The notes beneath the pieces were generated by a model. The model ran no database searches. It saw nothing but the letters and a program-made list of their open reading frames with translations, and was not told where the DNA came from. The position numbers and the translations under genes were made by a program. 64,000 nucleotides of DNA, taken from positions 369,797 through 433,796 of the forward strand of contig JAWQFM010000022.1 of NCBI GenBank assembly GCA_033442325.1. The letters run 5' to 3'. Position 1 is the stretch's first letter; each line of letters opens with the position of its first letter. Of this stretch, positions 1,524 through 55,099 are shown piece after piece. This DNA is from Salpingoeca rosetta. Its lineage: Eukaryota; Protista; Choanoflagellata.

Positions 1524-2006
1524 CTGTTGGTTGGGTAGTTTGGGGTCATGAGAAGAGTGAGATGGTGTTGATGGGAGTGGGAGGGTGTGAAAAGAGTGGG
1601 ACGGAGGCGAAAGGAGTGGGGCAGGTGTTGGTGCAACTTGGGACATCTCGATGTGAGATGCATGCACATGTACAAATATTACAATGCACATGCACACATG
1701 CACATCCACGCACACATCCACGCACACGCACACACACGCACACACACTCTCTCTCTTTCCGCCTCCCTCTGTCTCTTTGTTCTCCTTGTTTACGTCGTAC
1801 GATTGTAAGAGCTTGCTGCATGTTGCCTTTGCGCTGTCACCCTTTCTTTTTCCTCATCGTTTTCCCGTGGCTGCTTCTTGCTGCGTTTGCTTGTTGGGCT
1901 CATCATCGTCGTCGCCCATCATCGCTGGCTCCGGATTGCAACTGTATCCGACAGCACAATTATTTCACCACTCCTTCCTTCCTCCAAAACAACAACACTG
2001 GCGACG

Positions 2007-2642: not shown

Positions 2643-2687
<45 letters not shown>

Positions 2688-3787: not shown

Positions 3788-3833
<46 letters not shown>

Positions 3834-4442
3834 TCACACAATCTCGCCTGCTCGCAGGTCACACGTGAGGTGGCTGCGAAGTTTGCGGCCCTGAAGGACC
3901 CGCACTTCACGGTTGTTGTTCAGCCAGCTGTTGAGGTTAGCCTATAGTACCTAAATTTGCTCTACAATCTGTTTGGTTGCATGCGCTTTTGCAAATGTAA
4001 CTCCCTCCTCCCTCACTTACTTCCTCTTACTCCCTCTTACTCCCTCTTACTCCCTCACTCACTCACTGACTCACTCGCTCACTCCCTCACTCACTCACTC
4101 ACTCACTCACTCACTCACTCACTCACTCACTCACTCACTCACTCACTCACTCACTCACTCACTCACTCACTCACTCACTCACTCACTCACTCACTCACTC
4201 CCTCACTCACTCACTCACTCACTCACCAATAGGACGTTGCCCTTGACAAGTACCCGCCGTCCATTGTGCAGGATCTGCTGTCCGACTTGGACTGCTTCCA
4301 CCCGAGTCTGTGCACGGATCAGGGCTTTGCTGTTGGCGTGTGGAACAACATGTTCACGCCCCCAAGCCAGAAGAAGAACAACATTGACCCCCTCAAGCCT
4401 CCAAAGGCATATTGCCCAACCGCCAACGACTACATCCAGTAG
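2007..4442 (+). CDS. PLB1: Secreted phospholipase B-like GDSL/SGNH lipase, multi-exon
   Basis: Signal peptide MARRTAVFVFAAIVAVAVLSGSAAA. Spliced VLHLKPGNIAAVMALGDSITAG (GDSL block I), LNFAVSEA, WKLLTIFIG|ANDIC, and DCFHPS (catalytic DxxH). GT-AG introns, e.g. 2128-2427 and 2503-2801. TAG at 4440-4442. Confidence 0.88.
4055..4226. repeat. (TCAC)n tetranucleotide microsatellite in an intron
   Basis: Direct tandem ctca/tcac array. Confidence 0.95.
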
Positions 4443-5483
4443 CCGCTGCGCTCCTCCTTGGGGGAAACCCCACCAAACACGCACGCACACACGCACGCAC
4501 ACTCATTCAGCGCGTGCGCACGTTGTGGCTCTTCGCACCATGTTCCTTGCTCGCCTTCTTGCAGTGTGTGATGTTCCTCCCCCCCCCCCGGTCCACCGCA
4601 TCGGCCTTTTGTGCCGACTCTGACTTGCACGTTTCACAACTCCTGCTTCGATTTACAATCACGTCACGCTCGTCAAACACTCTCCACATCTCTTCTCCAG
4701 TTCCAAAGCACTTGTCGCACACACACCTGTTCGACTCCCATTACAGTCCGTGAAAAAAATGTTGGAACAAGCGTTTATGGACCGCCACTCAACGAGTGGC
4801 TCACGTCAGAAAAGAAGGAAAAAACACTTGCGGTGAAGACAGAAAACCACGAAACACAGCAAGATGAACCAATCAATGCACGCATGCACACACAAGTGGA
4901 CGCGTCACAGGGCGCACGTGCCCACACAAAAAAGGACTAGTGAAGAACACGAAAGAACACAAGAGTATGAAGAGACGTGACAACTTTGTTGTCTGCTTGT
5001 CCACTCCACAAATTCACGCCAAGGATACAACAGCTAGGATACGCAGGAACACGAACACGCGTGTAACAAACATTCGCCTTTGCCCCACACCCCAAAAACA
5101 AGACATGACAAACAAATCCACCCATCCATGGGCCAGCCATCATGTTTGTGGTGGCGCTGCAACTGCAAGCAGAACAAACAGCCCGGCAACACCGTTGGCA
5201 TCACCGTGCTGCTTGCTCGCTCGCCTCGCTTGCCCGCCACTCCTCTTCACAAACGCACACACACGCACACACACTACACACACATGCAAACACCACCACG
5301 ACCATCTTGGCACAATCACAACACCAACAAACATTCGCTCCGCCTCCCCTTGCCCCCTTCACCCACTCGCCCTCCCTCACGCTCGCGCCATACGCATCTC
5401 AGCGCTAACACATGAAACTCAAAAACAACAACAACACAAACACAACACAAACACAAGTTGCGTCAAGTCACAGTTGCAACAGC

Positions 5484-8400
5484 TCAAGCTGTGGACTCCT
5501 CGCCGTGATTGTTATCGCCGCCGTCGTTGTCGCCACCACCATCCTTGCGCTGCGGCTGCCGCGGGGTTGGCCGTCCAGGCATGGTCATGGTCGCGCCACC
5601 ACCGCCGCCACCACCAGCCTTTGGTCCGGGGCGGGCAGGGAAGCTGGGCATGTTGGTGCGCGGGCCAGCAGCACCGAGTGACGGTGGCGGCATGCCCGGC
5701 ATCATGGGCGGCATGTTGGTGCGGCGCTGCTCGCTAAACGGATCCGCAAACGTCGGCGGCTTTGGCGGAACGGGGAAGCCAAGCGAGGGCGGTGGTCCCT
5801 GGCGCATGGTGCCCTGCACACCCGGTGGCGGCGACAGCACAGGCGACGTGCGCCCGCCTCCTTGCATGTTGGCCCCGCGCTCAAGGGTTCCAAACGGATC
5901 GCCACGTGCCTTGCGCTGCATCAGCGGGCTGCCCTTGCTGCGCTTCTCGCTGCCAAAGTTTGGCTTCTGGAACGTCGGCACCTGCGTCTTTGAGCTGGTG
6001 GGCGCCTGCATCACGGGGCTGCCGGGGAACGCCATGCCCCCGGTCGTCTGGCCGGGAAGGTCCATGCGCCCGGCAGGGCTCGTAGGCAGCGTCGGCATCT
6101 GTAGGTTGGCCGCCGTGCGTGGCCCTTCGCCAGGCAGCGGGCTGCCTGGGCCGCGCGAGTCAGAGGTGGAGCGCTTGAGCGAGTGCGTCTGCGTCTGCGG
6201 CTGCGGCGAGCTGTCCGGCATGTCCGCCACAGCGTTGCGCTTCACGCGCGGGAAGGACGGCTTGGTGCGCTGCGTGCGCTGCGTCATGGGCTGCCGTGGG
6301 CTGATGGTCTGGCTTGCGCGGCGGTCGGCAAACTGCACCAGCGACGCCTGGTCCCGCACGCGCGTCTTGGGCTTGGTCAGGTCGCGCTTGAGCGCATCCC
6401 ACGCCGCCTGCGCATTGCCGTGCGTCACTGTGACGCGGCTCTTGGAGGCCGCATTGCGCGCACGCCGGCGATACACAATCACCGACACGACAATCAGCAC
6501 CACCAGCGCAACCGCAAACAGCGAAACGCCCGCCGTGCCCCACGTGCTGTCCAGCGCACTGGAGCCCGAGCTGACGTTTTCGGTTTCCTGCTCCACCGTG
6601 ACAGAGTACGAGCCAAAGGAGGCAGGGAGGTCCACATCGAAATCGCTTATGACACGGCGAACCTCGTCCGCGTCAATTTCTTCCGCAATGGCGTCCACAG
6701 ACACCTCTGCAATCACGCTGCCTGCGCGCAGGGACGTCACGTTCACCTGCCCGCAGTCCACAAATGAATTTGTCGCGTTGCACACGGCGTCGATCAGCCG
6801 CTGCGTCATCCCGGGCGTCCAGTCGTCCAGCGTCTGCTCAACAAAGCGGTACGTGCCAACCACGCGGAAGCTCTTCTGGCGAGCTGTTGTTGTTCCAGGG
6901 CAGCAAGGGCACAGCAAACACAGAGAAACAAGTGGGGAAACACAGTCGTATCATGAGCAATGAGCACAATCAACGCACATGAGCGGCAGGAGACCAGAGC
7001 GTCAGACAACACACAGGCATGCAATGCAACCACAGGAAGACAGACAAGCACACACATGAGCACACAGCCATAAACACAAACACAAAAGACACAGTGAGCG
7101 AGCAAGCAAAAGCAAGCAAGCAAACTTACGACAAGCGGGCCGGATGCAGGGCAGAGTGCGGTTGCGCTGGGCCGGGCACTCCATGCCACCATTCTCCGGT
7201 TGGACGAGAACAGAGCGGTTCTGCAGGTAGGTGCCGTGTCCACCGCATGACACCGAGCACGGCGTGGCATCCATCCACTTGCTCATCACACAGTCCACGG
7301 CAAACGGGCACGGGTTGCTGGTGCTGTCGAGCACAGTCACGTCCACAACGGCTGTGCGCTTGTTGCCAGAGGCATCAAACACCGTGTACAGCACAGGCTG
7401 CACACCAACATCCGCGCACGTAAACTCCGTCTGGTTCAGCTGCTGCGACACAACACCGCAAGCGTCGGCAAAGGTCGCCGTCACCTCGTCCACACTCAGC
7501 GTGTAGCTCTGGTCAGCATCCAGCGTGATGCTCAGCGGGCTTACGCTCAGCGTCGGCCGCGTCTGATCAAGCGCGCCAACATAAATGGTGCCGTTGACAC
7601 TGTTGCCAGACGGGTCAGTCGCCCTCACAACAACAGGCACGCTCTCCGTCAGCTGCGCGCATGTCACCGTCGACACGTTGCTGCTCAACTCAAAGCCGCA
7701 CGCGTCAAACGTGCTGCCGTCCAGGGCCGTTGGGTCCACAACGGCAACGCCAGTCTCGTTGAGCACAAACGAGTAATTGGTCTTCAGCGCAAGCACGGGT
7801 GCCACGCGGTCAAGAACAACAATGCTCGTGTTGCTGGAGCCGCGGTTGCCGTTCACATCGTCCACATACACGGTGGCCGTGTTGTTCTGGCCAACCATCG
7901 AGCACGTCACCTGCGCCGGAAGAACAAACGCATCTGAAACGCCACACGCGTCTGTAGCGTTCTCGCTCAGGGCGGCGGCATCAAACACGTGCGTGCCCGT
8001 GGTGCCGTTCAGCTCCACGACATACTCCGCGCGAAGCGGCACTGTCGGTGCCGTGACATCCACCACGGTGTAGTTCACTTGCAGCGAGCCAACGTTGCCG
8101 GCAGCGTCAGCCGCGTACAGCGTGTTGTTCTGCACGCCGACGTCGGCGCACGTGAGCTGCGTCACGTCCAGGCTCAGCTGCGCCACGCCGCACACGTCCG
8201 ACGAGCCCGCATCGACATCTGTCGGCAGCAGCGCCGCCATGCCGCTGGCATTCAGCGTCACCTGGGAGATGGACGCGCGCACAACCGGCGCTGTCTCATC
8301 GTTCACCGTCACCAGCGCGGTGTCCGATGCAGTGTTGCCGTACGCATCGTGCACCGTCAGGTTGACCGTGTTCACACCAGCATGCTCGCACGTGAACAGC

Positions 8401-11400
8401 GTCTGGTTCACCGTCGTCAGCACAACGCCGCATGCGTCGTTGGAGCCGCCGTCCACCTGGTCGGCACTCAGCTCGGCCGTTCCAGTCGTGCCGTTCAGCA
8501 CAAGCGTGGCCGGCTGCGTCACCACGTTGGGCAGCAGCGTGTCAACCACGTGCACATTGATGGTGTCCGTGGCCACGTTGCCGTTCACGTCCGTCACCGT
8601 CACCGTCACGCTGTTGTCTCCAACAGTCGCGCACGAAAACTCAGTGTCAGACAGCACAAACGAGGCAATGCCGCAAGCGTCCGTGGTGCCCGTGTCGACG
8701 AGCGTGCGGTTGATGGATGCGAGGCCGCTCGAGTTGAGCTGCACCACCACGTCCGTCAGGCTCAGCGACGGCGCCGTGCTGTCCACCACAGCAACATCCA
8801 CCACCGTCGACGCGTTGTTGCCGTTCACATCGACAGCGGTGAAGAGCACGGAAATAGTGCCCACGTCCGCGCAGGTCAGCGCAGTCTGGTTCACGCTCAG
8901 AGACGCAATGCCGCAAGCGTCGCTCGTGCTGTCGTCCAGGTTGCTGGCAGCAAGCGTGCCTGTGCCGGCTGCGCTCAGCGTGCGAGTCACGCCTTGAAGC
9001 ACGCCCACCGTTGGCTCGGTCTGGTCCACGATGGTCACGTTCTCTTGTGCGGAGTTGGCGTTGCCATACACGTCAGTCACGGTCAAGGTCACCACGTTGA
9101 CACCAACGTCGGCGCACGAGAACGCAGACGGCGACACGGAGGAGCCGAGCACGCCACACACGTCCGTGGACCCGCTGTTCACGTCGCTCGGCTGCAGGGA
9201 CACGTGCCCGCCGCTGTTGAGCACCTTAGTCGTCGGCGCCGTGTTGATGTCCGGTAGCCCGCTGTCAAGCACGCGCACCTCAATGGTCGTGGATGCAGGC
9301 TGCTCGGACGTGTCAAACACGGTCAGCGTCACCGTGTGGGTCTGGTTCACGTCACTGCAGCCAAACACTTCCATGTCCAGCAAACGACGGCTGATGCCGC
9401 AGTTGTCGCTCTCCGTCAGCAGCACGTCCCCAACCGACAGTGTGGCAAGGCCGTTCGCGCCGAGCGTCAGGTTGTACGCCGCTACGGCTGTGACCGTGGG
9501 TGGCGTGTCGTCCTCCACAGTCACTTGAACCGTCTCCGTTGTGGTCAGGCCGTTCACGTCCGTTGAGGCAATCTCCACAAACTTGACGCCAGTGTCACTG
9601 CAAGAGAAGAGCGTGTTGTTGGCAGTGGTGCTGGCAATGCCGCAGTTGTCGTCCAGTGACGAAATCGCTTCGGAAGGCAAGAACGTGCGCTGCCCAGTCG
9701 CGTTGAGAGACACTGTCACATCCTGCGTCACCAACGTCGGCGCAAGGGTGTCACTGACCGTGATCGTCACCGCCGCAGAGTCGCTGTTGCCAGCAACATC
9801 GTACACGGAGACCGTCACGGGGACGGGGCCCACGTCAGAGCACGAGAATGCAGACTGCGTCACGTTCTCCACATCCACGGCGCAGTTGTCCGTGGAGGAG
9901 GTGATGAGCGTGCCAACAGACACAGATGCAGCGCCGTTGCTGTCAAGCGTGACACTGTGAGAGCCAACGACGCTCACAACAGGAGCCTCGTTGTCCTCAA
10001 CAGTCAGCGTCAGTGACGCGCTCTGCACGTTGCCGGCTGCATCGCGAAGGTACACGGTTGCGGGCACGGTGCCCAGGTGGCTGCAGTCAACGCTGCTCGG
10101 CTCAATCCATGTCGACACAACACCGCAGTTGTCCGAAGAGCTCGCAATCGCGTCGGCGGGCGCAACGCTGGCCTGGCCGGTGCTGTTCAGCACAAGCGTC
10201 ACGTCCTGCACAGTCACGTCGGGCAGAATGTTGTCCTCAACAGTGATGTTCACGGTGGCCGTCGACACAAGGCCAGTGGTGTCCGTCGCGGAGAACGTCA
10301 GCGTCTGCGGACCAAGATCGGCACAGGCGTACATGTCCGTGGAGATGGCCAGGGAGGAAATGCCGCAGTTGTCGTCAGTACCCAAGTCAAGGTCCGCTAC
10401 CGTGACAGCAGCTTCGCCAGTCGCATTCAGCTCAACCGTCAGGGACGGCCGTACAGAGAGCACGGGGGAAAGGAGATCCTCAACGAGGACCTCCGTCACA
10501 TGCGATGTTGTCAGATTCGCCACATCCATGATAGTGGCAAGCAGCAGGTTTACACCGCGGTCGGCACACGTGAAGTCTGTCTGGTTCAGCGTTTGCTCCA
10601 CCACCTCACAGTTGTCGTCGGCGCCGAGAATGACTGTGGCCGTGTCAATGCTGCCGCTGCCAGACGCATCCAGTGACACGTTGTAGCGCGGCTCAACACT
10701 GAACGTCGGCGCGATGGTGTCACGCACGTCAACGCCAATCAGGCCGCTGTACGAGTTGCCGTTGCTGTCCTTCACAAACAGGTTCACGTCCTCATGGCCG
10801 AGATCGGCGCACTTGAACACAGACTTGCTGACAATTTCCTGCACAACACCGCACGCATCGCTGGTGTTGGCGTCCAGTGTCGCGCGGCCAGACGCGTCCA
10901 GATCAAGCACAACATCGGGTGCAAGCAGCTCCGGGTCGACGGGATCGCGAACATACACCTGCACAACCTTTGTGGCCGTGTTGTTGTGAATGTCTGTCAC
11001 GCTCACAACAATGTCGTGGGCATCGTCCTGAACGTCAACGCACGTGAACACTGTCTGGGACAGGTTGGCGTGCGACACTTGACAGTTGTCGCTCATGCTC
11101 GTGATTACCTGAGATGGGCTCAGGGTTCCAAAGCCCGCACTGCCAAGCTGCACCACGCGGGACGACACAACAGAAAACTCCGGCGAGATTGTGTCCACCG
11201 CCGTAACAACAGCAGTGGCAGTGCCGACGTTGCCACTACCGTCCGTGGCAGACACAGTGATGGTCTGAGGAATGCTTGCCTGAGAGCACGTCAGCGATGT
11301 AACCGACAAGGACACGCTGCTCACACCGCAGGCATCCGCAGTCGACACCACGACGTCCGCTTCAGTCACAGACGTCATACCGGAGGAGTCAAGCTCCAAC

Positions 11401-14400
11401 GTCACGTTCTGTGTCGAAACAACAGGTGCAGTAGCATCCAGAACAGTCACGTCCATGGAAGCATAGTCAAAGTTGCCGCTGGCATCGACGGCGCCAATGG
11501 TGAGGTTGTTTGTTTGGTTCACGTTGGAGCAAGTCCAGCTCGATTCAACGTCGGCCAGCGAAGCTGCGCAGTTGTCAGTCAGGGATGACACAACGTCAGT
11601 GTGGTTAAGAACAACATCGCCTGCCGCAGACAACGTGACAGTCGTTGAAGCCAGAAGGGAGAGCACAGGCGCCTCCGTGTCGAGGACAAGGACGGACGAC
11701 TCAACAGATGCAACGTTGGACGATGAATCGGACGCGAACAACGTGACGTTCACCGAGCCAAGATCCGCGCATGTCACAAACGCAGGAACAGCATACGATG
11801 CCGCAACAGCGCAGTTGTCGGACGCGTTTGCGAAAAATGAAACGTCGGATGCACCGGTAGAGTTGAGCATCACTGTACCAGAGCCGAAATCCGTGATGAC
11901 AGGAGACTCGCTGTCAGTCACAGTCACTGCAAGCGTGTCCGTGCCGGTGTTCGAGCTCGGATCCGTCGCCGTCAGCGTGATCGTCACACCGCTCAGATCA
12001 GCGCACGTAAACAGCGACTGCGACAGCGTCACATCAGCACCGCAGTTGTCGCTCACAGAGTCATACGTCGAGCCAACAGACACCTCATACTCGCCACTGC
12101 TGTTCAGGAACACCTCAAGGCTCGCAACAGCCGTCACAACAGGAGACTCGTTGTCCTCAACAGTCACCGTCACAGTCGACGAGTCAGTGTTGCCGCTCGT
12201 GTCCGTCACAGTGCCAGTCACAGTCTGCGCACCAGTGTCGGCACACGTAAACACATCCCAGTCAGCCTCAACGCTCGCAACAGCGCAGTTGTCAGCGCTC
12301 GACGTCACAATCTCCCCAGTCGTCAGACCATACTGCCCAGTGCTGTTCAGCGAAACACTGAACGCGCCAGCAACAGTCAGCGTCGGAGACTCGTTGTCAG
12401 TCACAGTCACTGCAAGCGTGTCCGTGCCAGTGTTCGAGCTCGGATCCGTCGCCGTCAGCGTGATCGTCACGCCGCTCAGATCAGCGCACGTAAACAGCGA
12501 CTGCGACAGCGTCACATCAGCACCGCAGTTGTCGCTCACAGAGTCATACGTCGAGCCAACAGACACCTCATACTCGCCACTGCTGTTCAGGAACACCTCA
12601 AGGCTCGCAACAGCCGTCACAACAGGAGACTCGTTGTCCTGCACAACAACCGTGCTCGTCCCGTTCGCGCTGTTCCCGCTCCCATCAGCCACAACCAGCG
12701 TCACCTCGTTGGACGTCAGCGCTGCAGCACAACCAAACACCGTCTGTGACAGGCTGCGCGTGTCAACACCACAAGCATCGCTCGAGCTCACCTCAACGTC
12801 CCCAACTGTGAGCACGCCAACGCCGCTGCCGTTCAGCACAACATTCACGCTCGGTGCAACACTCAGCACAGGCGACGTCACATCAATAACAGTCACGCTC
12901 GCCTGCCCGCTCGCAGTGTTCCCGCTCGCATCCTCAACCGTCACAAGCACAGTCTGAGTCGCATTCAGATCAGCGCACCCAAAGCTCGTCCGGTCAACGC
13001 TCGAGTCGCTAACAGCACAGTTGTCCTCGCTGCTCGCAATCACCTCGCTCGCGCTCAGGCTGCCAGTCCCAGACGCATCAAGCGTCACAACAGCAGACTG
13101 TGTCGTCACATTCGGGCTCAGCGTGTCAACAACAGTCACCTCAACATCGCCATTGCGGAACTGCCCGTTCACATCAGTCACAAACACACTCACGGTGTGC
13201 GGTGACGTCGCAACGTCAGCACAATCAGCAACCTCAAGGCTCGTGATAATGTCGGCAACGCCACACGTGTCATTGTGGAACGGAAGCGCATTCGCCGTGC
13301 CATCAACACCAAGCTCAACCGTGAACGGCGTGTTCACAAAGTTGGGCTTCTCGCTGTCAACAACCGTCACAGACACCTCCGACGTCGCAGTCAGCCCGTT
13401 GCTGTCCGTCGCCGTCACAAGAACCACATGCGGGCTCGTGCTCACATCATCACAGTCAAACAGCGTCTGGTTCAGACTGAACGTCACTGTTTCGCAGTTG
13501 TCGCTCGATGACACAACAACATCGTTCGCCATCAGCACAGCCTGCCCAGTAATGCCAACCTCAACCGTAATGCTGCTCACTGTCGTCATCACAGGTGCAT
13601 CCTGATCCACAACCGTCACATACGTCCGCGATGTCGCCGTGTTCCCAGACGTGTCCGTCGCTGTCACGGTCACAGGAATCACACTGCTGATGTTCCCGCA
13701 CGTGAACGTGTCAACATCAAGGTCGACGCTCGCAACTGCGCAGTTGTCAGCGCTCGAAGCAGACAGGCTGCCGCTCGTGATGACGCCGTTGCCATTGCCG
13801 TCAAGCACAACAGTATAGTTCGCAACGCTGCTCACAGTGGGCGACGCGTTGTCAGTCACAGTCACTGCAAGCGTGTCCGTGCCAGTGTTCGAGCTCGGAT
13901 CCGTCGCCGTCAGCGTGATCGTCACGCCGCTCAGATCAGCGCACGTAAACAGCGACTGCGACAGCGTCACATCAGCACCGCAGTTGTCGCTCACAGAGTC
14001 ATACGTCGAGCCAACAGACACCTCATACTCGCCACTGCTGTTCAGGAACACCTCAAGGCTCGCAACAGCCGTCACAACAGGAGACTCGTTGTCCTCAACA
14101 GTCACCGTCACAGTCGACGAGTCAGTGTTGCCGCTCGTGTCCGTCACAGTGCCAGTCACAGTCTGCGCACCAGTGTCGGCACACGTAAACACATCCCAGT
14201 CAGCCTCAACGCTCGCAACAGCGCAGTTGTCAGCGCTCGACGTCACAATCTCCCCAGTCGTCAGACCATACTGCCCAGTGCTGTTCAGCGAAACACTGAA
14301 CGCGCCAGCAACAGTCAGCGTCGGAGACTCGTTGTCAGTCACAGTCACTGCAAGCGTGTCCGTGCCGGTGTTCGAGCTCGGATCCGTCGCCGTCAGCGTG

Positions 14401-17400
14401 ATCGTCACGCCGCTCAGATCAGCGCACGTAAACAGCGACTGCGACAGCGTCACATCAGCACCGCAGTTGTCGCTCACAGAGTCGTACGTCGAGCCAACAG
14501 ACACCTCATACTCGCCACTGCTGTTCAGGAACACCTCAAGGCTCGCAACAGCCGTCACAACAGGAGACTCGTTGTCCTGCACAACAACCGTGCTCGTCCC
14601 GTTCGCGCTGTTCCCGCTCCCATCAGCCACAACCAGCGTCACCTCGTTGGACGTCAGCGCTGCAGCACAACCAAACACCGTCTGTGACAGGCTGCGCGTG
14701 TCAACACCACAAGCATCGCTCGAGCTCACCTCAACGTCCCCAACTGTGAGCACGCCAACGCCGCTGCCGTTCAGCACAACATTCACGCTCGGTGCAACAC
14801 TCAGCACAGGCGACGTCACATCAACAACAGTCACGCTCGCCTGCCCGCTCGCAGTGTTCCCGCTCGCATCCTCAACCGTCACAAGCACAGTCTGAGTCGC
14901 ATTCAGATCAGCGCACCCAAAGCTCGTCCGGTCAACGCTCGAGTCGCTAACAGCACAGTTGTCCTCGCTGCTCGCAATCACCTCGCTCGCGCTCAGGCTG
15001 CCAGTCCCAGACGCATCAAGCGTCACAACAGCAGACTGTGTCGTCACATTCGGGCTCAGCGTGTCAACAACAGTCACCTCAACATCGCCATTGCGGAACT
15101 GCCCGTTCACATCAGTCACAAACACACTCACGGTGTGCGGTGACGTCGCAACGTCAGCACAATCAGCAACCTCAAGGCTCGTGATAATGTCGGCAACGCC
15201 ACACGTGTCATTGTGGAACGGAAGCGCATTCGCCGTGCCATCAACACCAAGCTCAACCGTGAACGGCGTGTTCACAAAGTTGGGCTTCTCGCTGTCAACA
15301 ACCGTCACAGANNNNNNNNNNNNNNNNNNNNNNNNNNNNNNNNNNNNNNNNNNNNNNNNNNNNNNNNNNNNNNNNNNNNNNNNNNNNNNNNNNNNNNNNN
15401 NNNNNNNNNNNCACATGCGGGCTCGTGCTCACATCATCACAGTCAAACAGCGTCTGGTTCAGACTGAACGTCACTGTTTCGCAGTTGTCGCTCGATGACA
15501 CAACAAACGTCGTTCGCCATCAGCACAGCCTGCCCCAGTAATGCCAACCTCAACCGTAATGCTGCTCACTGTCGTCATCACAGGTGCATCCTGATCCACA
15601 ACCGTCACATACGTCCGCGATGTCGCCGTGTTCCCAGACGTGTCCGTCGCTGTCACGGTCACAGGAATCACACTGCTGATGTTCCCGCACGTGAACGTGT
15701 CAACATCAAGGTCGACGCTCGCAACTGCGCAGTTGTCAGCGCTCGAAGCAGACAGGCTGCCGCTCGTGATGACGCCGTTGCCATTGCCGTCAAGCACAAC
15801 AGTATAGTTCGCAACGCTGCTCACAGTGGGCGACTCGTTGTCAGTCACAGTCACTGCAAGCGTGTCCGTGCCAGTGTTCGAGCTCGGATCCGTCGCCGTC
15901 AGCGTGATCGTCACGCCGCTCAGATCAGCGCACGTAAACAGCGACTGCGACAGCGTCACATCAGCACCGCAGTTGTCGCTCACAGAGTCATACGTCGAGC
16001 CAACAGACACCTCATACTCGCCACTGCTGTTCAGGAACACCTCAAGGCTCGCAACAGCCGTCACAACAGGAGACTCGTTGTCCTCAACAGTCACCGTCAC
16101 AGTCGACGAGTCAGTGTTGCCGCTCGTGTCCGTCACAGTGCCAGTCACAGTCTGCGCACCAGTGTCGGCACACGTAAACACATCCCAGTCAGCCTCAACG
16201 CTCGCAACAGCGCAGTTGTCAGCGCTCGACGTCACAATCTCCCCAGTCGTCAGACCATACTGCCCAGTGCTGTTCAGCGAAACACTGAACGCGCCAGCAA
16301 CAGTCAGCGTCGGAGACTCGTTGTCAGTCACAGTCACTGCAAGCGTGTCCGTGCCAGTGTTCGAGCTCGGGTCCGTCGCCGTCAGCGTGATCGTCACGCC
16401 GCTCAGATCAGCGCACGTAAACAGCGACTGCGACAGCGTCACATCAGCACCGCAGTTGTCGCTCACAGAGTCATACGTCGAGCCAACAGACACCTCATAC
16501 TCGCCACTGCTGTTCAGGAACACCTCAAGGCTCGCAACAGCCGTCACAACAGGAGACTCGTTGTCCTCAACAGTCACCGTCACAGTCGACGAGTCAGTGT
16601 TGCCGCTCGTGTCCGTCACAGTGCCAGTCACAGTCTGCGCACCAGTGTCGGCACACGTAAACACATCCCAGTCAGCCTCAACGCTCGCAACAGCGCAGTT
16701 GTCAGCGCTCGACGTCACAATCTCCCCAGTCGTCAGACCATACTGCCCAGTGCTGTTCAGCGAAACACTGAACGCGCCAGCAACAGTCAGCGTCGGAGAC
16801 TCGTTGTCAGTCACAGTCACTGCAAGCGTGTCCGTGCCAGTGTTCGAGCTCGGATCCGTCGCCGTCAGCGTGATCGTCACGCCGCTCAGATCAGCGCACG
16901 TAAACAGCGACTGCGACAGCGTCACATCAGCACCGCAGTTATCGCTCACAGAGTCATACGTCGAGCCAACAGACACCTCATACTCGCCACTGCTGTTCAG
17001 GAACACCTCAAGGCTCGCAACAGCCGTCACAACAGGAGACTCGTTGTCCTCAACAGTCACCGTTACAGTACCAGCGTCGGTGTTTCCGCTTGTATCCGTG
17101 GCCGTTGCTGTCACGACCACTGTGCCAACATCACTGCATGCCACTTGGTTTTTGCTGAAAACCAGGGCGTTGATGGCGCAGTTATCTGTGTAGCTCGCGA
17201 CAATGTCACTTGTGTCGAACTCATACAGGCCGGAGCTGTTGAGTGAAACGGTAAAGTCAGCCTGCATGGTGACAACGGGATTGAGCATGTCATCAACGCG
17301 CACAAGGACGGTGTCGTTGCCCGTGTTGCCTGCCTCATCCTCAATTAGCACGAGCGTTGTTGAGTCGCCAACGTCGTCGCAGGTGAACAGGCTCTTCTGC

Positions 17401-20400
17401 AGCTGGGTTGTGTAACCACAGTTCTCAACAACGGAGACGATGGCGCTTCCCGTGTCAAGCTCGATGTAACCGGTGGCGTTGAGATCGAGACCGATTCGGA
17501 ACACTTGAGCGTTGACCACGGGTATCTGTGTATCCTGCACGTTGACAGTGGCCGTCTTTGCGTTAGTGTTGCCGTTGACGTCCGTCACCGTCACGGTGAT
17601 CGTGTTCGCACCGAGGTTGGAGCACGTAAACGCCGTGGTGGAGACTATGGTGCTGGCAACGCCACAGTTGTCTGTCACAGATGAGGACACGTCACCCGAT
17701 GTGATGCTGCCGTCGCCGTTGGCATCCAAGACGACAGTTGTGTTGTTGATGTCAAAGGTGGGTGCTGCCGCATCCTGCACCGAGACCTGCGTGGTGGCTG
17801 TGGTTTGCAAGCCGCTGCTGTCTGTGACCACGATGCTGATGGTATGTGAGCCGACGTGGGCGCAGGTGAACCCGTCCTGGGACAGGGAGGTGGCGGCAAC
17901 GGCGCAGTTGTCGCTGTAGCTGTCCGTGACGTTGGCAATGGTGATGTTGGCGATGCCTTGATCTGCGGAGAGGCTGAGCGTCAGCGGTGCGGCGGGGACA
18001 AGAATGGGCGCCGTGGTGTCCTGCACTTCCACACGGAAACCCATGCTTGCCGACTGGCCCTGTGCATCTGTGACGGTGAAACTCAGCGTCTGGTTGCCCG
18101 TGTTGTCGCACGTGAAGGCGGTCTGGTTCACGGCAACTTGGGTGATGGCGCAGTTGTCGGAGCCAACGTACGTGATGTCTGCGGCATCCAGCGCGGCAAC
18201 GCCGCTCGAGTTGAGAGTGAGCGTGTACGCGTCCACAGACTGCAGTGTAGGGTCGGTGTCATCGGACACCGTGATGGACGTGGTGCGGGTGACCTGGTTG
18301 CCTGATCCGTCTGTTGCAGTCACGGAGACGGACTGCGTGCCGACGTCGGAGCAGGTGAACGTCTGGCTGGAGGAGGAGAGGGTGGTGGTGATGCAGTTGT
18401 CGCCCACGCTGCGCACGACCTCTGTGGTGTTGAAGTCGGCGAGGCCGGACGCGTTGAGGGAGATGGAGAAGGAGGAATCGAGGGTGAGCGTGGGGTTGCG
18501 CGTGTCAACGATGGTGACGCTGGCATCTGCCGCGTCCACGTTGAAGAAGTCATCAAAGACAACGAGCGTGACGGTCTGGTTGCCGAGATCGTCACAGGTG
18601 AACACGCCGGGGGCGGCGGAGAGCGAGCCGATGGCGCAGTTGTCGTATGAGCCGTTGTCGACAGTGGCTGGCGTGATGCTGACAAAGCCACCGGCACCAA
18701 GCTGGAGGGTGGTGGTGCCCGAGATGGTGACAGCGGTCGGGTCCATGTTGTCGATAATCTCCACGGGAACGGTCTGAGTGTCTGACTGGCCGTTGACGTC
18801 CGTCACGGTGACGTCGATGTTCTGCGTTGTGCCGGCGTCGGCGCAGGTGAAGAGGGACTTGGACACGGTGGTGGAGTAGACGGCGCAGTTGTCGCTCTGC
18901 GTGACAATGACGTCGGCAGCGGTCAGTGGGGCCTGACCGGACGCGTTGAGGTACACCTGGTGGGCCGACTTGAGGGTGAACACGGGCGCGGAGACGTCGC
19001 GCACGGTGATGAGGGACGTGGCCGTGGCGGCGTTGCCGCTCGCGTCTGTGGCGGTGACGAGCACGGTGATGGCGGCGCCGACGTCGTTGCAGGAGAAGGA
19101 GGTGCGGTTGAGTACCTGTGAGGCCACGCCGCAGTTATCGACGGCAGACGTGACGAGGTCACCGGCAGCGATCGTGGCGGCCCCGGCAGCATCAAGGTCC
19201 ACGACGAGCGTTGCGTTGACGGCAAGCACGGGGGCGGCCGTGTCAACAACCTCGACGGTGGTTGTGGAGGAGTTGGAGTTGCCGTTGACGTCGTAAGTGG
19301 TAGTGGTGATGGTGTTGTTGCCGAGGTCGGCGCACTCAAACAGCGACTGGGAGAGCGTCTGGTTAAGCACGGCGCAGTTATCGCTGGTGCCGGTGGTGAT
19401 GTCGCCTGCAGCCAGGGTGGCGTTGCCGTCTGTGGCGTGGAGGGTGAGCAGGTGGTAGCCGACGGTGGTGAGGTCAGGGTTGACCGAGTCCTCCACGGTA
19501 ACGGAGACGTTCGCTGTCGCGGCGTTGCCCTGGGCGTCGCTGATGGTGAGGAGGACGTCGGCAGTGCCAACGTCGCTGCAAGCGAACGCCGACTGCGCGA
19601 GCGTGCGCGTTGTGACGGCGCAGTTGTCCGAGTCGGAGTTGATGACGTCGGAGGCGGTGATGCTCACCGCGCCCGCGTCGTCAAGCTGGAGGGTGGTGGC
19701 GGCCACGGCGTCCAGGGTAGGCACCTCGTCATCGGCCACGGTGACGGCGACGGTGTCTGTGTCTGTGTTGCCGGCCGTGTCTGTGGCGGTGACGAGCAGG
19801 GTGCTGGCGCCCACGTCGGCGCAGGTGAGCTCGGTGAAGTTGAGGGCGACGGTGACGCCGTCACAGTTGTCTGTGGCGTTGATGAAGACGTCAGCCTGCT
19901 GGATGGTTGCCAGGCCGGACGTGTTGAGCGTGACGTCGAGGGAGGAGACGGCGAAGAGCAGCGGGGCAATGTTGTCGACGACCGTTGCCTCGACATCCAC
20001 AGAGGCCTGGTTGGCCGAGGCATCGGTGACCACGGCGGTGATGTTGTACGTGGTGCCAATGTCGGAGCAGGAGAAGGCTGTGCGGGAGAGGGTGGTGGTG
20101 GCGACGGCGCAGTTGTCGCTGCTGCTGCTGACCACATCCGCGTCTGTGATGGTGGCGAGCCCCGAGTCGTTGAGGGCCACGTTGAAGGGCGCCTGCGGGG
20201 TGATGGAGGGCACCTCGGTGTCCACGACGGTGACGTTGGTGTACTTTGTGGTGGAGGCGGAGCCATCGGAGGCGGTGATGGAGATGTTGAAGGAGGAGCC
20301 CGCGTCGCTGCAGGCGAACGTCTGCTGGGACGCGGAGAGGCTCACGCCGCCAACGCCGCAGTTGTCGTCGAGGCCGACCGCCAGGGCGTCGAGGTCGAGC

Positions 20401-21473
20401 GAATACAAGCCCGACGTGTTTAGCGTGGCGGTGACGGCGTCGGTGAGGGTGAAGGTGGGCCCCGTGTCATCGACGACGGTGATGACAACCATGTCGGTGT
20501 CCGTGTTGGCTGAGTCGTCCGTGCCCGTGAGGGTGACGGTGACTGGGGTGCCGACGTCTGTGCAGGAGAAGCTGGCCACGTCAATGGAGAGGGTGACGTT
20601 CTCGCAGTTGTCTGTCGCCGTGTCTGTCACCTGCGCAGCGTCGATGGAGGCCAGGCCGGAGACGTTGAGCGCGAGGGAGAAGTCCGCCACGGCTGTGACG
20701 GTGGGGGCGCTGGTGTCGGCGATGGTGACAGAGTCTGAGGACGTGGCGGCGTTGAAGTTGCTGTCCAGGACGATGAGCGTGACGTCGTTTGCGCCGATAT
20801 CGGTGCAGTAGAAGACGTTTGGCTGGACGCTCCTGGAGAAGATGCCGCACGCATCGGTGGTGGCCGATGCCAGGGCGCTCGGGGAGAGGATCACCTGCCC
20901 AAAGCTGTTGAGGGACTTTGTCCCTGGCGACTGAGGGGTGATGCTCGGCGCCGTGTCATCCTGCACGGTGACGGTGGCGGTGTCCGTGGCGTTGTTGCCG
21001 GCCTCGTCCTCCACGGTGAGCGTGACGCTCACGGGTCCAACGTCAGAGCAGGAGAAGCTGGTCTGTGAGGCGGAGAAGAGAAGGTTGCCGGCCGTGGTGG
21101 TGTCGTCTGAGCTGCCGCCGTCGAGGTTCGCTGGGTCGAGCGTGTACGTGCCGTCGGCGGCCAGGGTGATGGTGATGTCCTGGGCGACGGCGGTGGGCGG
21201 CGTGGTGTCCACGGCATGTGTAGGTGCGGAGAAGAGCAGCACAGCTGCAAGGAAGGCCAGAGTGGTGGTAACAAAACGCGACTGAAGTGTCGCAGACGTC
21301 GCCGCATGCTGACGCACGAGAACAGGGGCGTCAACAGCTACGGCAGCACCAGCACCACTGGTTCGGTAACGACGGTGGTGCGAAGAAGAGGTCGTCGGCA
21401 TCTTTGTGGTCATGTCTGCACGTGGTTGGTGGTGCAGGGAGCGATGATGCTTGACGCAGGCTGGCAAGCCCAT
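5484..21473 (-). CDS. Giant type-I membrane protein: signal peptide, ~57 Ig/HYR-like ~80-aa 'DNC' repeats, TSP1, SEA, TM, Pro-rich cytoplasmic tail (2 exons; intron 6884-7129)
   Basis: Joins ORFs 15471..21485, 7002..15416 and 5484..6917. Hydrophobic leader FVTTTLAFLAAVLLFSAPTHA. Repeat consensus D..P...(L[DN]..G)...SDNC...F.C.D.G...VT.TD..GN. TSP1 DCVMSKW..CSVSCGG.G...R..R...C. SEA-like SLRAGSVIAEV. TM AGVSLFAVALVVLIVVSVIVY followed by RRRAR. The GTAAGT donor and CAG acceptor keep frame (C-P-R-Q-K). Interrupted by the N gap and two nearby +1 indels. The start ATG could be 21473 or 21413. Confidence 0.85.
11895..17063. repeat. Near-identical intragenic tandem duplications: a 483-bp (2-domain) unit nested in a 1938-bp (8-domain) unit
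   Basis: 13021 matches 14959 (offset 1938). 16081, 16564 and 17047 match (offset 483). Copies differ at only a few bases. Confidence 0.92.
15312..15411. other. Assembly gap (100 N)
   Basis: Run of N. The flanks correspond to 13373 and 13425 of the paralogous repeat copy. Confidence 0.99.
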
Positions 21474-22020
21474 GGCCGTAGCCAAGAAGAGCCAGCGACG
21501 AAGCGGAGAGACGAAGCGTGTGGCGCAGGCAACAGCAGATCTGTCTCAAGTGTGTGTGTGTGTGTGTGTGTGGATGTGTGTGGATGTGTGTGTGTGTGTG
21601 TGTAGATGTGTGTGTGTGTGTGTGTGTGTGTGTGGATGTGTGTGTGTGTGGATGTGTGTAGGTGTGTGTGTTTGAAGCGGTGTGGTGAGCGGTAACACAA
21701 AGGTCAATGGGAAAAACGAAACAGCAACCCACAGGGTGCGGTAGAACAATGAGTTTGTCGTTGCCAGGTCAACAAAAGAACAAGAACGATCGGGAAGGGG
21801 TCAGGAAAGCAAAACCAGTCGGAAAGAGAAATGGTTGTGGTGGGTAGTGATGTGAAAGGCGGTGGGCGGGTTGGCGTTGAAAGCGCAGCGCACACAGCAG
21901 TGTGTGTGTTTGTGTGTGTCCAAGTCAAGCAAGGTCAGAAAGAAAACAAGAGGAGACGAGAGGATCAAGACGATCAACGTCAACGATCAGGGGTGCCCAG
22001 CACAGCGGTGGATGGCGCGC

Positions 22021-44197: not shown

Positions 44198-44250
<53 letters not shown>

Positions 44251-54032: not shown

Positions 54033-54110
<78 letters not shown>

Positions 54111-55026: not shown

Positions 55027-55099
<73 letters not shown>

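What the first reader, a model, noticed from the sequence alone, without database searches (positions are those of the whole stretch)
5484..21473. Giant chimeric surface receptor: ~57 Bacteroidetes-type Ig/HYR-like repeats fused to animal-type TSP1-SEA-TM
Seen: about 57 hand-counted ~80-aa repeats (e.g. VDSTAPSLSLTDVVVQLNSSGLASINRTLVDTGTTDACGIASFVLSDTEFSCATVGDNSVTVTVTDVNGN). Repeats and TSP1 lie in one ~14-kb exon in an otherwise intron-dense region; SEA, TM and tail are in the second exon. Knowledge, from memory: this 'VQLDASG..IDNGSTDNCGI..F.C..VG.NTVTLTVTD.NGN' repeat is typical of large T9SS-secreted surface proteins of Bacteroidetes/Flavobacteria, which are prey and morphogenetic-signal sources for choanoflagellates. 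Inference: a horizontally acquired bacterial adhesin module was grafted onto a mucin-like eukaryotic receptor stalk. The product would be a very long filament that could act in prey capture, glycocalyx or colony adhesion. I know of no described protein with this architecture.
Basis: partly seen in the sequence, partly recalled or inferred. Interest (0 to 1): 0.85.

Follow-up and report, generated by a model that had tools for sequence, protein, structure and literature searches.

The report
Giant choanoflagellate surface protein, bacterial-type repeats
This is a real, expressed Salpingoeca rosetta gene (PTSG_08193) for a roughly 5,200-residue membrane-anchored surface filament; its 57 repeats otherwise occur almost only in secreted surface proteins of Bacteroidota bacteria, so it is a likely but unproven cross-domain gene transfer that databases already list but no paper discusses.

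Summary
On the minus strand, 5484-21413 encodes one type I membrane protein: a signal sequence, 57 repeats of about 81 residues, a TSP1 domain, a 246-nt GT-AG intron, an SEA-like domain, a TM helix and a 328-residue tail.

- **Expression:** stranded RNA-seq covers the gene. 54 reads and one RNA contig join the repeat/TSP1 exon to the SEA/TM exon.
- **Assembly gap:** it lies in a 1,938-nt unit repeated at 99.4% identity. The intact copy implies 51 missing bases, in frame, plus two probable homopolymer errors.
- **Repeat family:** an HYR-related Ig-like domain absent from the Pfam copy used. It has 16,586 protein clusters; 209 of 243 top proteins carry a type IX secretion tail. In this 55-Mb genome it occurs only in this gene.
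- **Conservation:** three other choanoflagellate-like genomes share the architecture, one with the intron at the same site.
- **Transfer:** domain trees do not place the repeats inside Bacteroidota. Bacteria-to-eukaryote transfer rests on distribution only, and another unidentified eukaryote also has the repeat.
- **Prior record:** the gene is PTSG_08193, marked "FOREIGN" in one supplementary table and never discussed.
- **Function:** published counts are higher in solitary cells than in colonies, which argues against colony adhesion.

Novelty and interest are moderate.

The parts
21393..21413 (-). Start of the public gene model (MTTKMPT...). The 5' end was not tested with reads.
21213..21269 (-). 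Hydrophobic core of the signal sequence (TTTLAFLAAVLLFSAPTHA), preceded by an unusually long 48-residue n-region. Cleavage before VDTTPP is inferred.
   Evidence: inference
7332..21212 (-). Array of 57 tandem repeats of about 81 aa. Each is an Ig-like domain with two cysteines, distantly related to HYR. Consensus: D..xP....V.LN..G......V..S..DNCGV......FTC.D.G...VT.T.TD..GN......VTV. The array is one open exon apart from the gap.
11902..17099 (-). Zone of recent tandem duplication. An 8-repeat unit of 1,938 nt is present about 2.4 times at 99.4% identity, and a 2-repeat unit of 483 nt at 98-99%. Copy number here is the least certain part of the assembly.
15312..15411 (.). Assembly gap written as 100 N. 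The intact paralogous copy (13374-13424) implies 51 missing bases, which is 17 codons and in frame.
15507..15536 (-). Two single-base homopolymer insertions (an extra T at about 15507 and an extra G at about 15536) relative to the intact copy, within 125 nt of the gap edge. They break the frame. They are probably read-end errors, and the public model splices this stretch out.
7131..7310 (-). Thrombospondin type 1 (TSP1) domain, ending exactly at the exon boundary.
   Evidence: (PF19028 E 2.8e-11; PF00090 E 1.5e-5)
6884..7129 (-). Spliceosomal intron of 246 nt, GT..AG, phase 1. The position is conserved in ortholog L016.
   Evidence: (17+37 spliced reads; RNA contig X7 record 13; absent from DNA run X1)
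6567..6883 (-). SEA-like juxtamembrane domain (beta-alpha-beta-beta-alpha-beta), with the G-S-V-I motif at 6711-6722.
6471..6530 (-). Transmembrane helix GVSLFAVALVVLIVVSVIVY, followed by RRRARN (positive-inside).
5487..6470 (-). Cytoplasmic tail of 328 aa, rich in Pro and Gly. Motifs invariant across four orthologs: AWD (6390-6404) and FP.PPKPP.F.DPFS (5733-5777). The stop codon is at 5484-5486.
5380..5483 (-). 3' untranslated region, at least as far as the RNA contig reaches. RNA coverage continues to 5000 across a CA microsatellite.

Best explanation
Window 5484-21413 (minus strand) is the single-copy Salpingoeca rosetta gene PTSG_08193.

**Product.** It encodes a type I membrane glycoprotein of about 5,210 residues. 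The public model has 5,120 because it skips the gap.

**Outside the cell.**
- A very acidic rod of 57 Ig-like repeats. Its length would be roughly 0.2 micrometre if extended (inferred).
- A TSP1 domain.
- An SEA-like module that holds the rod to the membrane.

**Inside the cell.** A proline-rich tail carries a conserved F-x-D-P-F motif.

**Origin of the repeats.** They belong to an HYR-related family that is otherwise almost confined to cargo proteins of the Bacteroidota type IX secretion system.
- Most likely one or a few repeats entered a choanoflagellate ancestor from such bacteria.
- They lost the bacterial sorting tail and were joined to a eukaryotic TSP1-SEA-TM-tail module.
- They were then multiplied inside the gene, and this is still going on in S. 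rosetta.

**Likely role (inferred).** A long adhesive or spacer filament of solitary (thecate and swimming) cells, used for binding substrate or bacterial prey. The SEA-like module could let the filament break away under force, and the tail motif could couple it to endocytic adaptors.

**What is shown.** Gene structure, expression, splicing, repeat family and its distribution, and conservation of the architecture.

**What is inferred.** Direction of transfer, extended shape, SEA cleavage, adaptor binding and the cellular role.
For: **Structure and identity.**. Identity with PTSG_08193 comes from 99.9% identity to the public model, the 5,120-aa row and the matching N-terminus.

**Expression and splicing.**: strand-specific depth of about 6-86 per bin over 5000-10900, 54 spliced reads, and one 6,316-nt RNA contig across the joint.

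**Repeat fold.** pLDDT 97.4. TM-score about 0.6 to PKD, Rib and SraP domains. TM-score 0.90-0.95 to Bacteroidota T9SS/HYR clusters. hhalign to HYR gives 95% probability, E 1.7e-8.

**Distribution.**
- 16,586 clusters at E<=1e-3.
- The top hits that carry a source name are Bacteroidota at about 35% identity over 1,500 aa, except one misbinned MAG.
- 209 of 243 proteins have a T9SS tail.
- About 77 of the 80 best GTDB loci are titled Bacteroidota, at 45-61% identity to one repeat.
- The family occurs only in this gene in its own genome.
- There is no metazoan hit.

**Age and conservation.**
- L011, L012 and L016/L017 share repeats-TSP1-SEA-TM-tail.
- L011 sits next to a eukaryote-type Trm8/METTL1 gene.
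- Some repeat pairs are positionally orthologous between species.
- GC3 and codon bias are host-like.

**Single origin.** This is compatible with the data: AU p 0.86.

**Cell type.** Counts are 1621-5451 in thecate cells and swimmers against 397-1246 in colonies.

**Tail motifs.** Invariant across the four orthologs.
Against: - **No nesting.** With HYR as outgroup the choanoflagellate repeats fall basal and the bacterial ones derived. Bacteria as one clade is not rejected (p 0.48). Phylogeny therefore gives no direction.
- **Thin sampling.** Only 70 bacterial repeats were sampled, over 82 alignment columns.
- **Wider eukaryotic presence.** An unidentified eukaryote carries the repeat in two other proteins. 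A published table labels the orthogroup 'Ureukaryote'. All eukaryotic repeats as one clade is not rejected (p 0.235).
- **SEA is weak.** There is no Pfam hit, and the fold match is tied with many ferredoxin-like folds.
- **Signal sequence.** It has an odd 48-residue n-region, and the 5' end was not checked.
- **Gap region.** Two frameshifts next to the gap are unresolved by reads.
- **Function.** It rests on analogy. The published counts are raw and from one study.
Confidence: 0.62

Rival explanations
1. Vertical eukaryotic family. The repeat is an old eukaryotic branch of the HYR superfamily, inherited vertically and lost many times. Its abundance in Bacteroidota reflects either a separate old history or a transfer from eukaryotes to bacteria.
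For: - The repeat is related to HYR at profile level, and HYR occurs in animals and choanoflagellates.
- The repeat is present in another, unidentified eukaryote in other architectures together with HYR, Ephrin_rec_like and cadherin-like domains.
- The published orthogroup label is 'Ureukaryote'.
- The HYR-rooted tree puts the eukaryotic repeats basal.
- Reciprocal monophyly is not rejected.
Against: - The family occurs in one gene only in the 55-Mb genome.
- There is no metazoan hit.
- Only five of the 243 best proteins are eukaryotic, against 209 with T9SS tails.
- The family spans many Bacteroidota orders.
- Single repeats are 45-61% identical across domains, which is too close for descent from a common cellular ancestor.
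- The basal placement is what long-branch attraction to a distant outgroup would give.
Confidence: 0.22
2. Artefact. The repeat exon is bacterial contamination or a misassembly joined to a eukaryotic exon, or the gene is a dead pseudogene because of the frameshifts at the gap.
For: - An assembly gap and two frameshifts lie at 15312-15536.
- 99.4% identical tandem units are prone to assembly error.
Against: - Spliced RNA reads and an RNA contig join the two exons.
- An independent DNA run holds 5000-10900 in one piece.
- GC and codon use are host-like.
- Four independent assemblies hold the same architecture, one with the same intron site.
- Everything outside a 30-nt stretch is open for 14 kb.
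- The frameshifts are homopolymer length changes at a contig end.
Confidence: 0.03
3. Different function. The protein is a colony (rosette or chain) cell-cell adhesion or matrix molecule, or a cadherin-type homophilic adhesin, as the GO term from 2013 implies.
For: - The 2013 InterPro/GO annotation was cadherin, 'homophilic cell adhesion'.
- It is a giant repeat ectodomain on a membrane anchor.
Against: - Counts are 3-10 times lower in rosette and chain colonies than in thecate and swimming cells.
- No Pfam cadherin hit appears in the four stretches scanned, about 1,340 of the roughly 4,630 residues of the repeat array.
- The repeat is HYR-like, with a conserved cysteine pair rather than calcium-binding linkers.
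Confidence: 0.08

Closest known systems
[quoted passage not shown]
   Same: They share the same 81-aa two-cysteine Ig-like repeat in long tandem arrays. Identity is about 35% over 1,500 aa and up to 61% for single repeats. They have the same extreme acidity, the same abundance of N-x-S/T, and predicted folds that superpose at 0.8-1.0 A.
   Different: The bacterial proteins end in a T9SS sorting domain and often carry canonical HYR, SprB, PKD or Fn3 domains. About 40% of their repeats have four cysteines. The S. rosetta protein has no sorting domain or canonical HYR, always has two cysteines, and ends in TSP1, an SEA-like domain, a TM helix and a cytoplasmic tail.
HYR (hyalin repeat) domain, Pfam PF02494
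   Same: Similar length and Ig-like fold. Shared D..P start, DNC motif and TD.SGN...V.V end. Profile-profile probability is 95%.
   Different: The Pfam HYR model gives no hit on the four stretches scanned, even at E 0.1. The cysteine pattern and the middle of the domain differ. In bacterial proteins the two domains occur side by side as distinct units.
SEA-anchored transmembrane mucins and dystroglycan (MUC1, MUC16, TMPRSS6, DAG1)
   Same: A juxtamembrane beta-alpha-beta-beta-alpha-beta module directly before a single TM helix. A G-S-V-V/I motif sits at the beta2/beta3 hairpin, where mucin SEA domains cut themselves. Z 7.4 to 1ivz, 7.2 to TMPRSS6 and 6.6 to dystroglycan.
   Different: There is no Pfam SEA hit, and the fold match is not specific. 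There are no Pro/Thr/Ser-rich mucin repeats; the stalk is made of folded domains. Self-cleavage is untested.
Giant choanoflagellate surface proteins with many Ig-like repeats (cadherins, Hedgling) described for S. rosetta and M. brevicollis
   Same: Very large type I membrane proteins of the same organism whose expression depends on cell type. PTSG_08193 itself carried an InterPro cadherin label in 2013.
   Different: The repeat here is not a cadherin domain (no Pfam hit in the stretches scanned). Its relatives are bacterial rather than animal.
Candidate horizontally transferred genes of S. rosetta (Matriano, Alegado and Conaco 2021, PMC7971027)
   Same: PTSG_08193 is row EGD76846 of their Table S1: alien index 458.7, 'FOREIGN', best hit Bacteroidetes.
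   Different: It is not discussed there. Its 'Ureukaryote' orthogroup label placed it outside the set they analysed further. That study treats whole genes and says nothing about the domain fusion.

Membership tests
Unnamed 81-aa two-cysteine repeat family of Bacteroidota T9SS cargo | Significant full-length match of each unit to a profile of the repeat, and reciprocal best matches to bacterial units | tested here: met
   57 matches at E 5.8e-26 to 6.5e-6. 16,586 clusters are found with the same profile. Single repeats are 45-61% identical to GTDB Bacteroidota loci. Fold TM-score is 0.90-0.95.
Bacteroidota T9SS cargo protein | C-terminal sorting domain (Por_Secre_tail PF18962 or CHU_C PF13585) | tested here: not met
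   The C-terminus is a TM helix plus a cytoplasmic tail, with no Pfam hit. It is not among the 209 proteins whose tails match the T9SS tail profile.
HYR domain (PF02494) | Match to the Pfam model above its gathering score | tested here: not met
   No HYR hit at E<=0.1 in four 338-500-aa stretches. The relation appears only at profile-profile level (95%), so this is the same superfamily, not the same family.
Thrombospondin type 1 repeat | Match above the Pfam gathering score, with the W..C..SCG.G...R...C...C pattern | tested here: met
   PF19028 scores 44.0 bits (cut-off 41). PF00090 scores 25.5 bits (cut-off 21.6). The pattern is visible and is conserved in the orthologs.
SEA domain (PF01390) | Match to the Pfam model | tested here: not met
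   No Pfam family matches the exon-2 product at E<=0.1.
SEA domain (PF01390) | Alpha/beta sandwich with beta-alpha-beta-beta-alpha-beta order, next to the membrane on the outside | tested here: inconclusive
   The model has exactly this order (pLDDT 73). Z is 7.4 to SEA structure 1ivz, but many unrelated ferredoxin-like folds score 7-8, and Foldseek lists no SEA entry in its top 50.
SEA domain (PF01390) | G-S-V-V-V-type self-cleavage motif at the beta2/beta3 turn, and actual cleavage | tested here: inconclusive
   The motif reads AGSVIAEV in S. rosetta, SGSVVVEV in L016 and EGST[IV]VVV in P0025 and P0091. G and S are invariant, and the motif lies at the predicted hairpin. Cleavage itself cannot be tested with these tools.
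Cadherin | Match to the cadherin domain model and calcium-binding linker motifs | tested here: not met
   No PF00028 hit in the four stretches scanned. The conserved columns are D, P, C, C, D, not cadherin linker motifs. The 2013 InterPro label is not reproduced for those stretches; about 70% of the array was not scanned against Pfam.
Horizontally transferred gene (bacteria to eukaryote) | Recipient sequences nested inside donor diversity in a supported tree | tested here: not met
   One choanoflagellate clade is favoured. The bacterial repeats can also be one clade with an HYR outgroup (p 0.48). The free tree puts the eukaryotic repeats basal.
Horizontally transferred gene (bacteria to eukaryote) | Patchy presence in the recipient group against broad presence in the donor group, and integration in the host genome | tested here: met
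   One gene in the genome. No metazoan hit. Thousands of Bacteroidota proteins. There is an intron, host-like composition and spliced mRNA.

The most novel reading that the evidence does not exclude
Choanoflagellates took the repeat that marine Bacteroidota use on their own secreted surface filaments and turned it into a prey-facing receptor. In this reading the 0.2-micrometre rod binds Bacteroidota surfaces or their filaments through like-with-like repeat contacts. The SEA-like module acts as a force-sensitive release. The conserved F-x-D-P-F tail motif hands bound prey to the endocytic or phagocytic machinery. This would link a cross-domain gene transfer directly to feeding on, or sensing of, the bacteria that also control S. 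rosetta development.
Probability: 0.1. Interest if true: 0.85.

Novelty: new variant of a known kind. Interest (0 to 1): 0.52.

Why it matters
[quoted passage not shown] S. rosetta's life history is steered by Bacteroidota that it also eats.

- **A concrete case to test.** This is a giant, well-expressed surface protein. Its whole ectodomain stalk is built from a repeat otherwise confined almost entirely to Bacteroidota secreted proteins, bolted onto a TSP1/SEA-like/TM module of the kind animals use. It can be used to ask how prey-derived domains enter the cell-surface repertoire near the root of animals.
- **It can be tested now.** S. rosetta has CRISPR editing, and the gene is single-copy.
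- **An unmodelled domain family.** The 81-residue repeat has more than 16,000 protein clusters, yet the Pfam copy used here has no model for it. Thousands of bacterial giants are therefore annotated only through a flanking HYR domain.
- **Database errors.** The public protein model is about 90 residues short because it splices out an assembly gap. At least one marine 'Rhodobacteraceae' MAG contig is in fact choanoflagellate-like DNA.

Tried and rejected
1. **N-glycosylation enrichment.** I tested whether N-x-S/T sequons are enriched in the eukaryotic repeats as a sign of domestication. The bacterial repeats have more (2.75 against 2.0 per repeat), so this was rejected.

2. **Scans of the GTDB genome collection.**
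   - The scan with a three-repeat stretch (243 aa) found nothing.
   - Only a motif-anchored alignment worked. Its hits are selected for one motif and are not an unbiased sample.

3. **Identifying the second eukaryote (L014, L015).**
   - Its glutamate dehydrogenase against the S. rosetta genome gave 38-69% identity per exon, which is not informative.
   - A database search with its PDIA6-like protein gave no close named relative.
   - It remains unidentified.

4. **Positional orthology of repeats between S. rosetta and L011.** It is clear only for a few distinctive pairs. Elsewhere the best and second-best matches differ by 1-3%.

5. **Domain trees.** FastTree and quick IQ-TREE topologies interleave eukaryotic and bacterial repeats (29 and 12 label changes). 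The AU tests cannot reject any of the clean alternatives. HYR rooting gave a probably artefactual basal position for the eukaryotic repeats.

6. **Foldseek on the SEA-like model.** It returned only generic ferredoxin-like folds.

7. **Apparent RNA variants.** Variants at 9881 and 9986 and a loose end at 9974 in run X22 are reads from the near-identical 'a'-type repeats outside the laid stretch. They are not editing or rearrangement.

8. **Literature.** No main text mentions PTSG_08193. The gene is not in the supplements of the 2025 iron-assimilation paper. Nichols et al. 2012 (cadherin catalogue) is not held, so I could not check whether this gene is one of the '29 cadherins'.

9. **Reads over the gap.** The gap was therefore not examined with reads.

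Full report
**1. What is there**

The feature lies on the minus strand. Three long open frames make up one gene:
- 15471-21485
- 7002-15416
- 5484-6917

The public protein collection holds a 5,120-residue model, P0121. It is 99.9% identical to the window's translation (2720/2723 over the part aligned). Three things identify it as Salpingoeca rosetta PTSG_08193 (EGD76846, UniProt F2UI97, 'Uncharacterized protein'):
- its length
- its N-terminus, MTTKMPTTSSSHHRRYRTSG...
- the 55.4-Mb genome size

**2. Anatomy**

In order along the protein:
- **N-terminus.** After a 48-residue N-terminal stretch comes a hydrophobic signal core ending ...FSAPTHA, followed by VDTTPP.
- **Repeat array.**
  - Cutting at the conserved D-x-C...C pair gives 55 units of 77-83 residues.
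  - A profile of 42 distinct units (alignment A1; invariant D3, P7, C39, C53, D67) finds 57 places in the whole genome. All lie between window 7332 and 21212, and there is nothing else at E<=0.01.
- **TSP1 domain.** It follows the array and scores above both Pfam cut-offs.
- **Intron,** then exon 2.
- **Exon 2** encodes an SEA-like domain of about 105 residues, a TM helix (GVSLFAVALVVLIVVSVIVY followed by RRRARN) and a 328-residue Pro/Gly-rich tail.

The ectodomain is very acidic: K+R is 1.3% and D+E 12% of repeat residues. It holds 118 N-x-S/T sequons.

**3. The gap (tested first, as asked)**

The 100 N at 15312-15411 sit inside a recently duplicated zone.
- An 8-repeat unit of 1,938 nt is present about 2.4 times at 99.4% identity. 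A 2-repeat unit of 483 nt is present at 98-99%.
- Downstream of the gap, 15012-15311 equals the intact copy 13074-13373 at 300/300.
- Upstream, 15412-15700 equals 13425-13711 at 286/287, plus two single-base insertions in homopolymer runs (an extra G at about 15536 and an extra T at about 15507).
- The intact copy has 51 bases, coding VLVTATDSNGLTATSEV, where the gap is.
- The change of duplication offset from 1938 to 1987 across the gap gives the same figure: 100 - 49 = 51.

The two sides are therefore continuous and in frame, provided the two extra bases are low-quality read ends next to a contig break. I think this very likely but did not test with reads.

The public model hides the problem by splicing about 88 codons out. 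With the gap at 51 nt the coding sequence would be about 15,630 nt, or 5,210 residues.

**4. Expression and splicing**

- Two stranded RNA-seq runs cover all of 5000-10900 at a depth of about 6-86 per bin. Nearly all first mates lie on the + strand, which fits a minus-strand transcript.
- 17 and 37 reads (10 and 23 start sites) skip 6884-7129, with CT..AC on the + strand, which is GT..AG on the gene strand.
- A 6,316-nt contig from a probable RNA run runs 5380-6883 and then 7130-10900.
- A DNA run holds the stretch unspliced in one contig.
- The junction reads ...PAC|P|RQKSF (phase 1), as in the public model.
- No other joint appears between 7130 and 10900. The gene has effectively one intron in 15.6 kb of coding sequence.

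**5. What the repeat is**

- Neither HYR nor cadherin matches, even at E 0.1, in four 338-500-residue stretches. The only hits are sub-threshold ones to Big_3_3 and CATSPERE_NTD1.
- NCBIfam gives only partial sub-threshold matches (LapB_rpt_80, OmpL47 barrel, tandem-95).
- AlphaFold2 with the 42-repeat alignment gives a beta-sandwich at pLDDT 97.4.
- Solved structures match at TM-score about 0.6: PKD, Rib, the SraP cadherin-like domain and the dystroglycan Ig-like domain.
- Predicted structures of Bacteroidota T9SS/HYR clusters match at TM-score 0.90-0.95 and 0.8-1.0 A.
- A profile-profile comparison with four HYR domains gives 95% probability, E 1.7e-8, over 78 columns.

It is therefore a distinct branch of the HYR superfamily that the Pfam copy used here does not model. 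In the bacterial giants the same stretches are likewise unannotated; only a flanking true HYR domain and the secretion tail are hit.

**6. Who else has it**

- A 1,500-residue stretch finds 1,809 proteins. Among the best 120, those with a source name are Bacteroidota (Saprospiraceae, Lewinellaceae, Phaeodactylibacter, Persicobacter, Flavobacterium, Fluviicola, Chitinophagales) at 29-42% identity. Most carry PF18962 or PF13585. The exception is P0091, labelled Rhodobacteraceae, which section 7 shows is a misbinned eukaryotic contig.
- The repeat profile finds 16,586 clusters at E<=1e-3 among 1.84 billion representatives.
- Of the 243 proteins fetched, 209 have a type IX secretion tail. Most of the rest are truncated fragments.
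- A motif-anchored scan of one genome per GTDB species confirmed 330 relatives. Of the best 80, at 45-61% identity to one S. rosetta repeat, about 77 are titled Bacteroidota of many orders. The three odd labels are MAGs.

**7. The architecture is conserved in relatives**

- **P0025 (L012) and P0091 (L011).**
  - They carry the same repeats followed by TSP1, an SEA-like domain, a TM helix and the tail. They are 30-31% identical to S. rosetta over the C-terminal 530 residues.
  - L011 is filed under a 'Rhodobacteraceae' MAG. Its neighbouring gene matches only eukaryotic Trm8/METTL1 structures (E 3e-15), and the S. rosetta genome holds a homolog.
  - The gene there has at least 50 repeats in two frames.
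  - L011 and L012 are collinear repeat for repeat at 54-90% identity.
- **L016/L017.** This closer relative comes from two public runs and is 43% identical in exon 2.
  - It has the same TSP1 end.
  - It has an AT-rich intron at the same site.
  - Its motif is a canonical SGSVVVEV.
- **Positional orthology with S. rosetta.** Against L011, a few distinctive adjacent repeats are positionally orthologous. Examples are the '...DDAHD...' repeat followed by the short '...DANTSDACGV...' repeat, and S. rosetta repeats 40-42 against L011 repeats 34-36.

The fusion and a multi-repeat array therefore predate the split of these species.

**8. Was it transferred, and which way?**

*For some cross-domain transfer.* Identity of 45-61% between single extracellular repeats of a choanoflagellate and Bacteroidota is too high for descent from a common cellular ancestor.

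*For the direction bacteria to eukaryote.*
- Enormous diversity across Bacteroidota.
- One gene only in S. rosetta.
- No metazoan hit.
- Only five eukaryotic proteins among the 243 best.

*Against, or unresolved.*
- The free trees interleave the groups with weak support.
- Holding all 88 choanoflagellate repeats together gives a better likelihood than the quick free tree (by +75; AU p 0.86).
- With ten HYR domains as outgroup, the choanoflagellate repeats fall basal, and bacteria as one clade is not rejected (p 0.48).
The basal placement is what long-branch attraction would produce, so I do not read it as evidence for the reverse direction.
- Two contigs from JGI sample 3300082588 carry eukaryotic genes (RPAP3, WH2, PDIA6-like, RabGAP, cytosolic carboxypeptidase). 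They encode the repeat in two other architectures:
  - P0231: Ephrin_rec_like, HYR, 15 repeats, TM.
  - P0101: 18 repeats, HYR, cadherin-like.
- I could not identify that organism.
- All eukaryotic repeats as one clade is not rejected (p 0.235).

*Age.* Host-like GC3 (0.749) and codon bias, together with the conserved intron, show that any transfer is old.

*My estimates.*
- Some cross-domain transfer: about 0.9.
- Bacteria to eukaryote, given a transfer: about 0.75.

**9. SEA-like module and tail**

- The four orthologs align over about 105 residues with 23 invariant positions. These include a G-S pair: AGSVIAEV, SGSVVVEV and EGST[IV]VVV.
- The model (pLDDT 73) has the order beta-alpha-beta-beta-alpha-beta, with G-S at the beta2/beta3 turn.
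- Structural matches:
  - An exhaustive structural comparison gives Z 7.4 to the MUC16-type SEA domain 1ivz, 7.2 to TMPRSS6 and 6.6 to dystroglycan. Unrelated ferredoxin-like folds score the same.
  - Foldseek lists no SEA entry.
  - Pfam gives no hit.
- I call it SEA-like, not SEA.
- In the tail, AWD just after the membrane and FP.PPKPP.F.DPFS are invariant. From my own knowledge, F-x-D-x-F and D-P-F are motifs that bind the AP-2 appendage. This is a lead, not a result.

**10. Function**

The supplements of Fairclough et al. 2013 list PTSG_08193 among differentially expressed genes. The counts are:

| Sample type | Samples | Counts |
|---|---|---|
| Thecate | ThA2, ThM, ThAM | 1621, 4852, 5451 |
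| Swimmers | SwM | 3126 |
| Rosettes | RCA1, RCA2, RCAM | 576, 1041, 1246 |
| Chains | CCM | 397 |

- The gene is therefore a product mainly of solitary cells.
- The counts are raw and come from one study.
- My mechanism (an extended adhesive or spacer rod, force-sensitive SEA-like anchoring, adaptor-binding tail) is inference from domain analogies. I give it about 0.35.

**11. Novelty**

- The gene model, an InterPro label (PKD, TSP1, cadherin-like, invasin) and a 'FOREIGN' flag are on record: alien index 458.7, with best hit the Phaeodactylibacter xiamenensis HYR protein at 26.5%.
- Because its orthogroup is labelled 'Ureukaryote', it fell outside the set that Matriano et al. analysed further.
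- No main text in the searchable library names it. Nor does any describe this architecture among papers mentioning both choanoflagellates and HYR.
- New here:
  - the definition of the repeat family and its confinement to one gene
  - the conserved fusion with a shared intron site
  - the resolved gap
  - the SEA-like G-S motif and the tail motif
  - the negative result on phylogenetic nesting

I rate it a new variant of a known kind, of moderate interest.

Noticed in passing
window 43090-45018 (-): A single 642-aa open frame with glycoside hydrolase family 32 N- and C-terminal domains (E 5e-40 and 1.5e-9) and a sub-threshold PAN_4 match between them (26.1 bits against a cut-off of 27). A fructan- or sucrose-splitting enzyme fused to an apple-type domain in a choanoflagellate could be another gene of foreign origin.
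   Followed up: partly
window 54144-60023 (+) and 51909-54113 (+): There are two further very long open frames, of 1,959 aa and 734 aa. The first has a PDZ domain near its start and a RasGAP domain at its end. The second has no Pfam match.
   Followed up: partly
L011 (NZXQ01000071.1 of GCA_002697785.1): A 14-kb contig filed under a marine 'Rhodobacteraceae bacterium' MAG is eukaryotic and choanoflagellate-like. It holds an ortholog of this gene with at least 50 repeats, in two frames that overlap at 3786-3889, beside a eukaryote-type Trm8/METTL1 gene. The MAG is contaminated.
   Followed up: yes
L014 10001-23689 and L015 3-11630 (JGI sample 3300082588): An unidentified intron-poor eukaryote (GC 43-50%) carries the same repeat in two other giant proteins. 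One has Ephrin_rec_like, HYR, 15 repeats and a TM helix. The other has 18 repeats, HYR, cadherin-like domains and a low-complexity tail. Its identity would bear on how widespread the repeat is in eukaryotes.
   Followed up: partly
window 3957-4623 (+), 5249-5292 and 21480-21650: Long CA-rich microsatellites, which read as HSLT/THTH repeats in translation, flank the gene on both sides. One sits in its 3' untranslated region, where RNA and DNA reads show length variation (joints 'goes back 32' and an inserted A at 5441 in the DNA run).
   Followed up: no
G000:C28:531931-532536 (-) and G000:C21:875956-876525 (+): These are the only places outside this gene that a three-repeat query touched in the genome (E about 4e-4, 28-30% identity). 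They lie in open frames of 1,280 and 1,913 aa. The repeat profile does not hit them, so they are probably true HYR or other Ig-like proteins.
   Followed up: no
Bacterial homologs P0001, P0005 and others: In Bacteroidota giants of 3,000-7,000 aa, the 20-60 copies of this repeat are not covered by any model of the Pfam copy used. Those proteins get their 'HYR domain-containing' names from a few flanking true HYR units. Half of the bacterial repeats have two cysteines and about 40% have four.
   Followed up: partly
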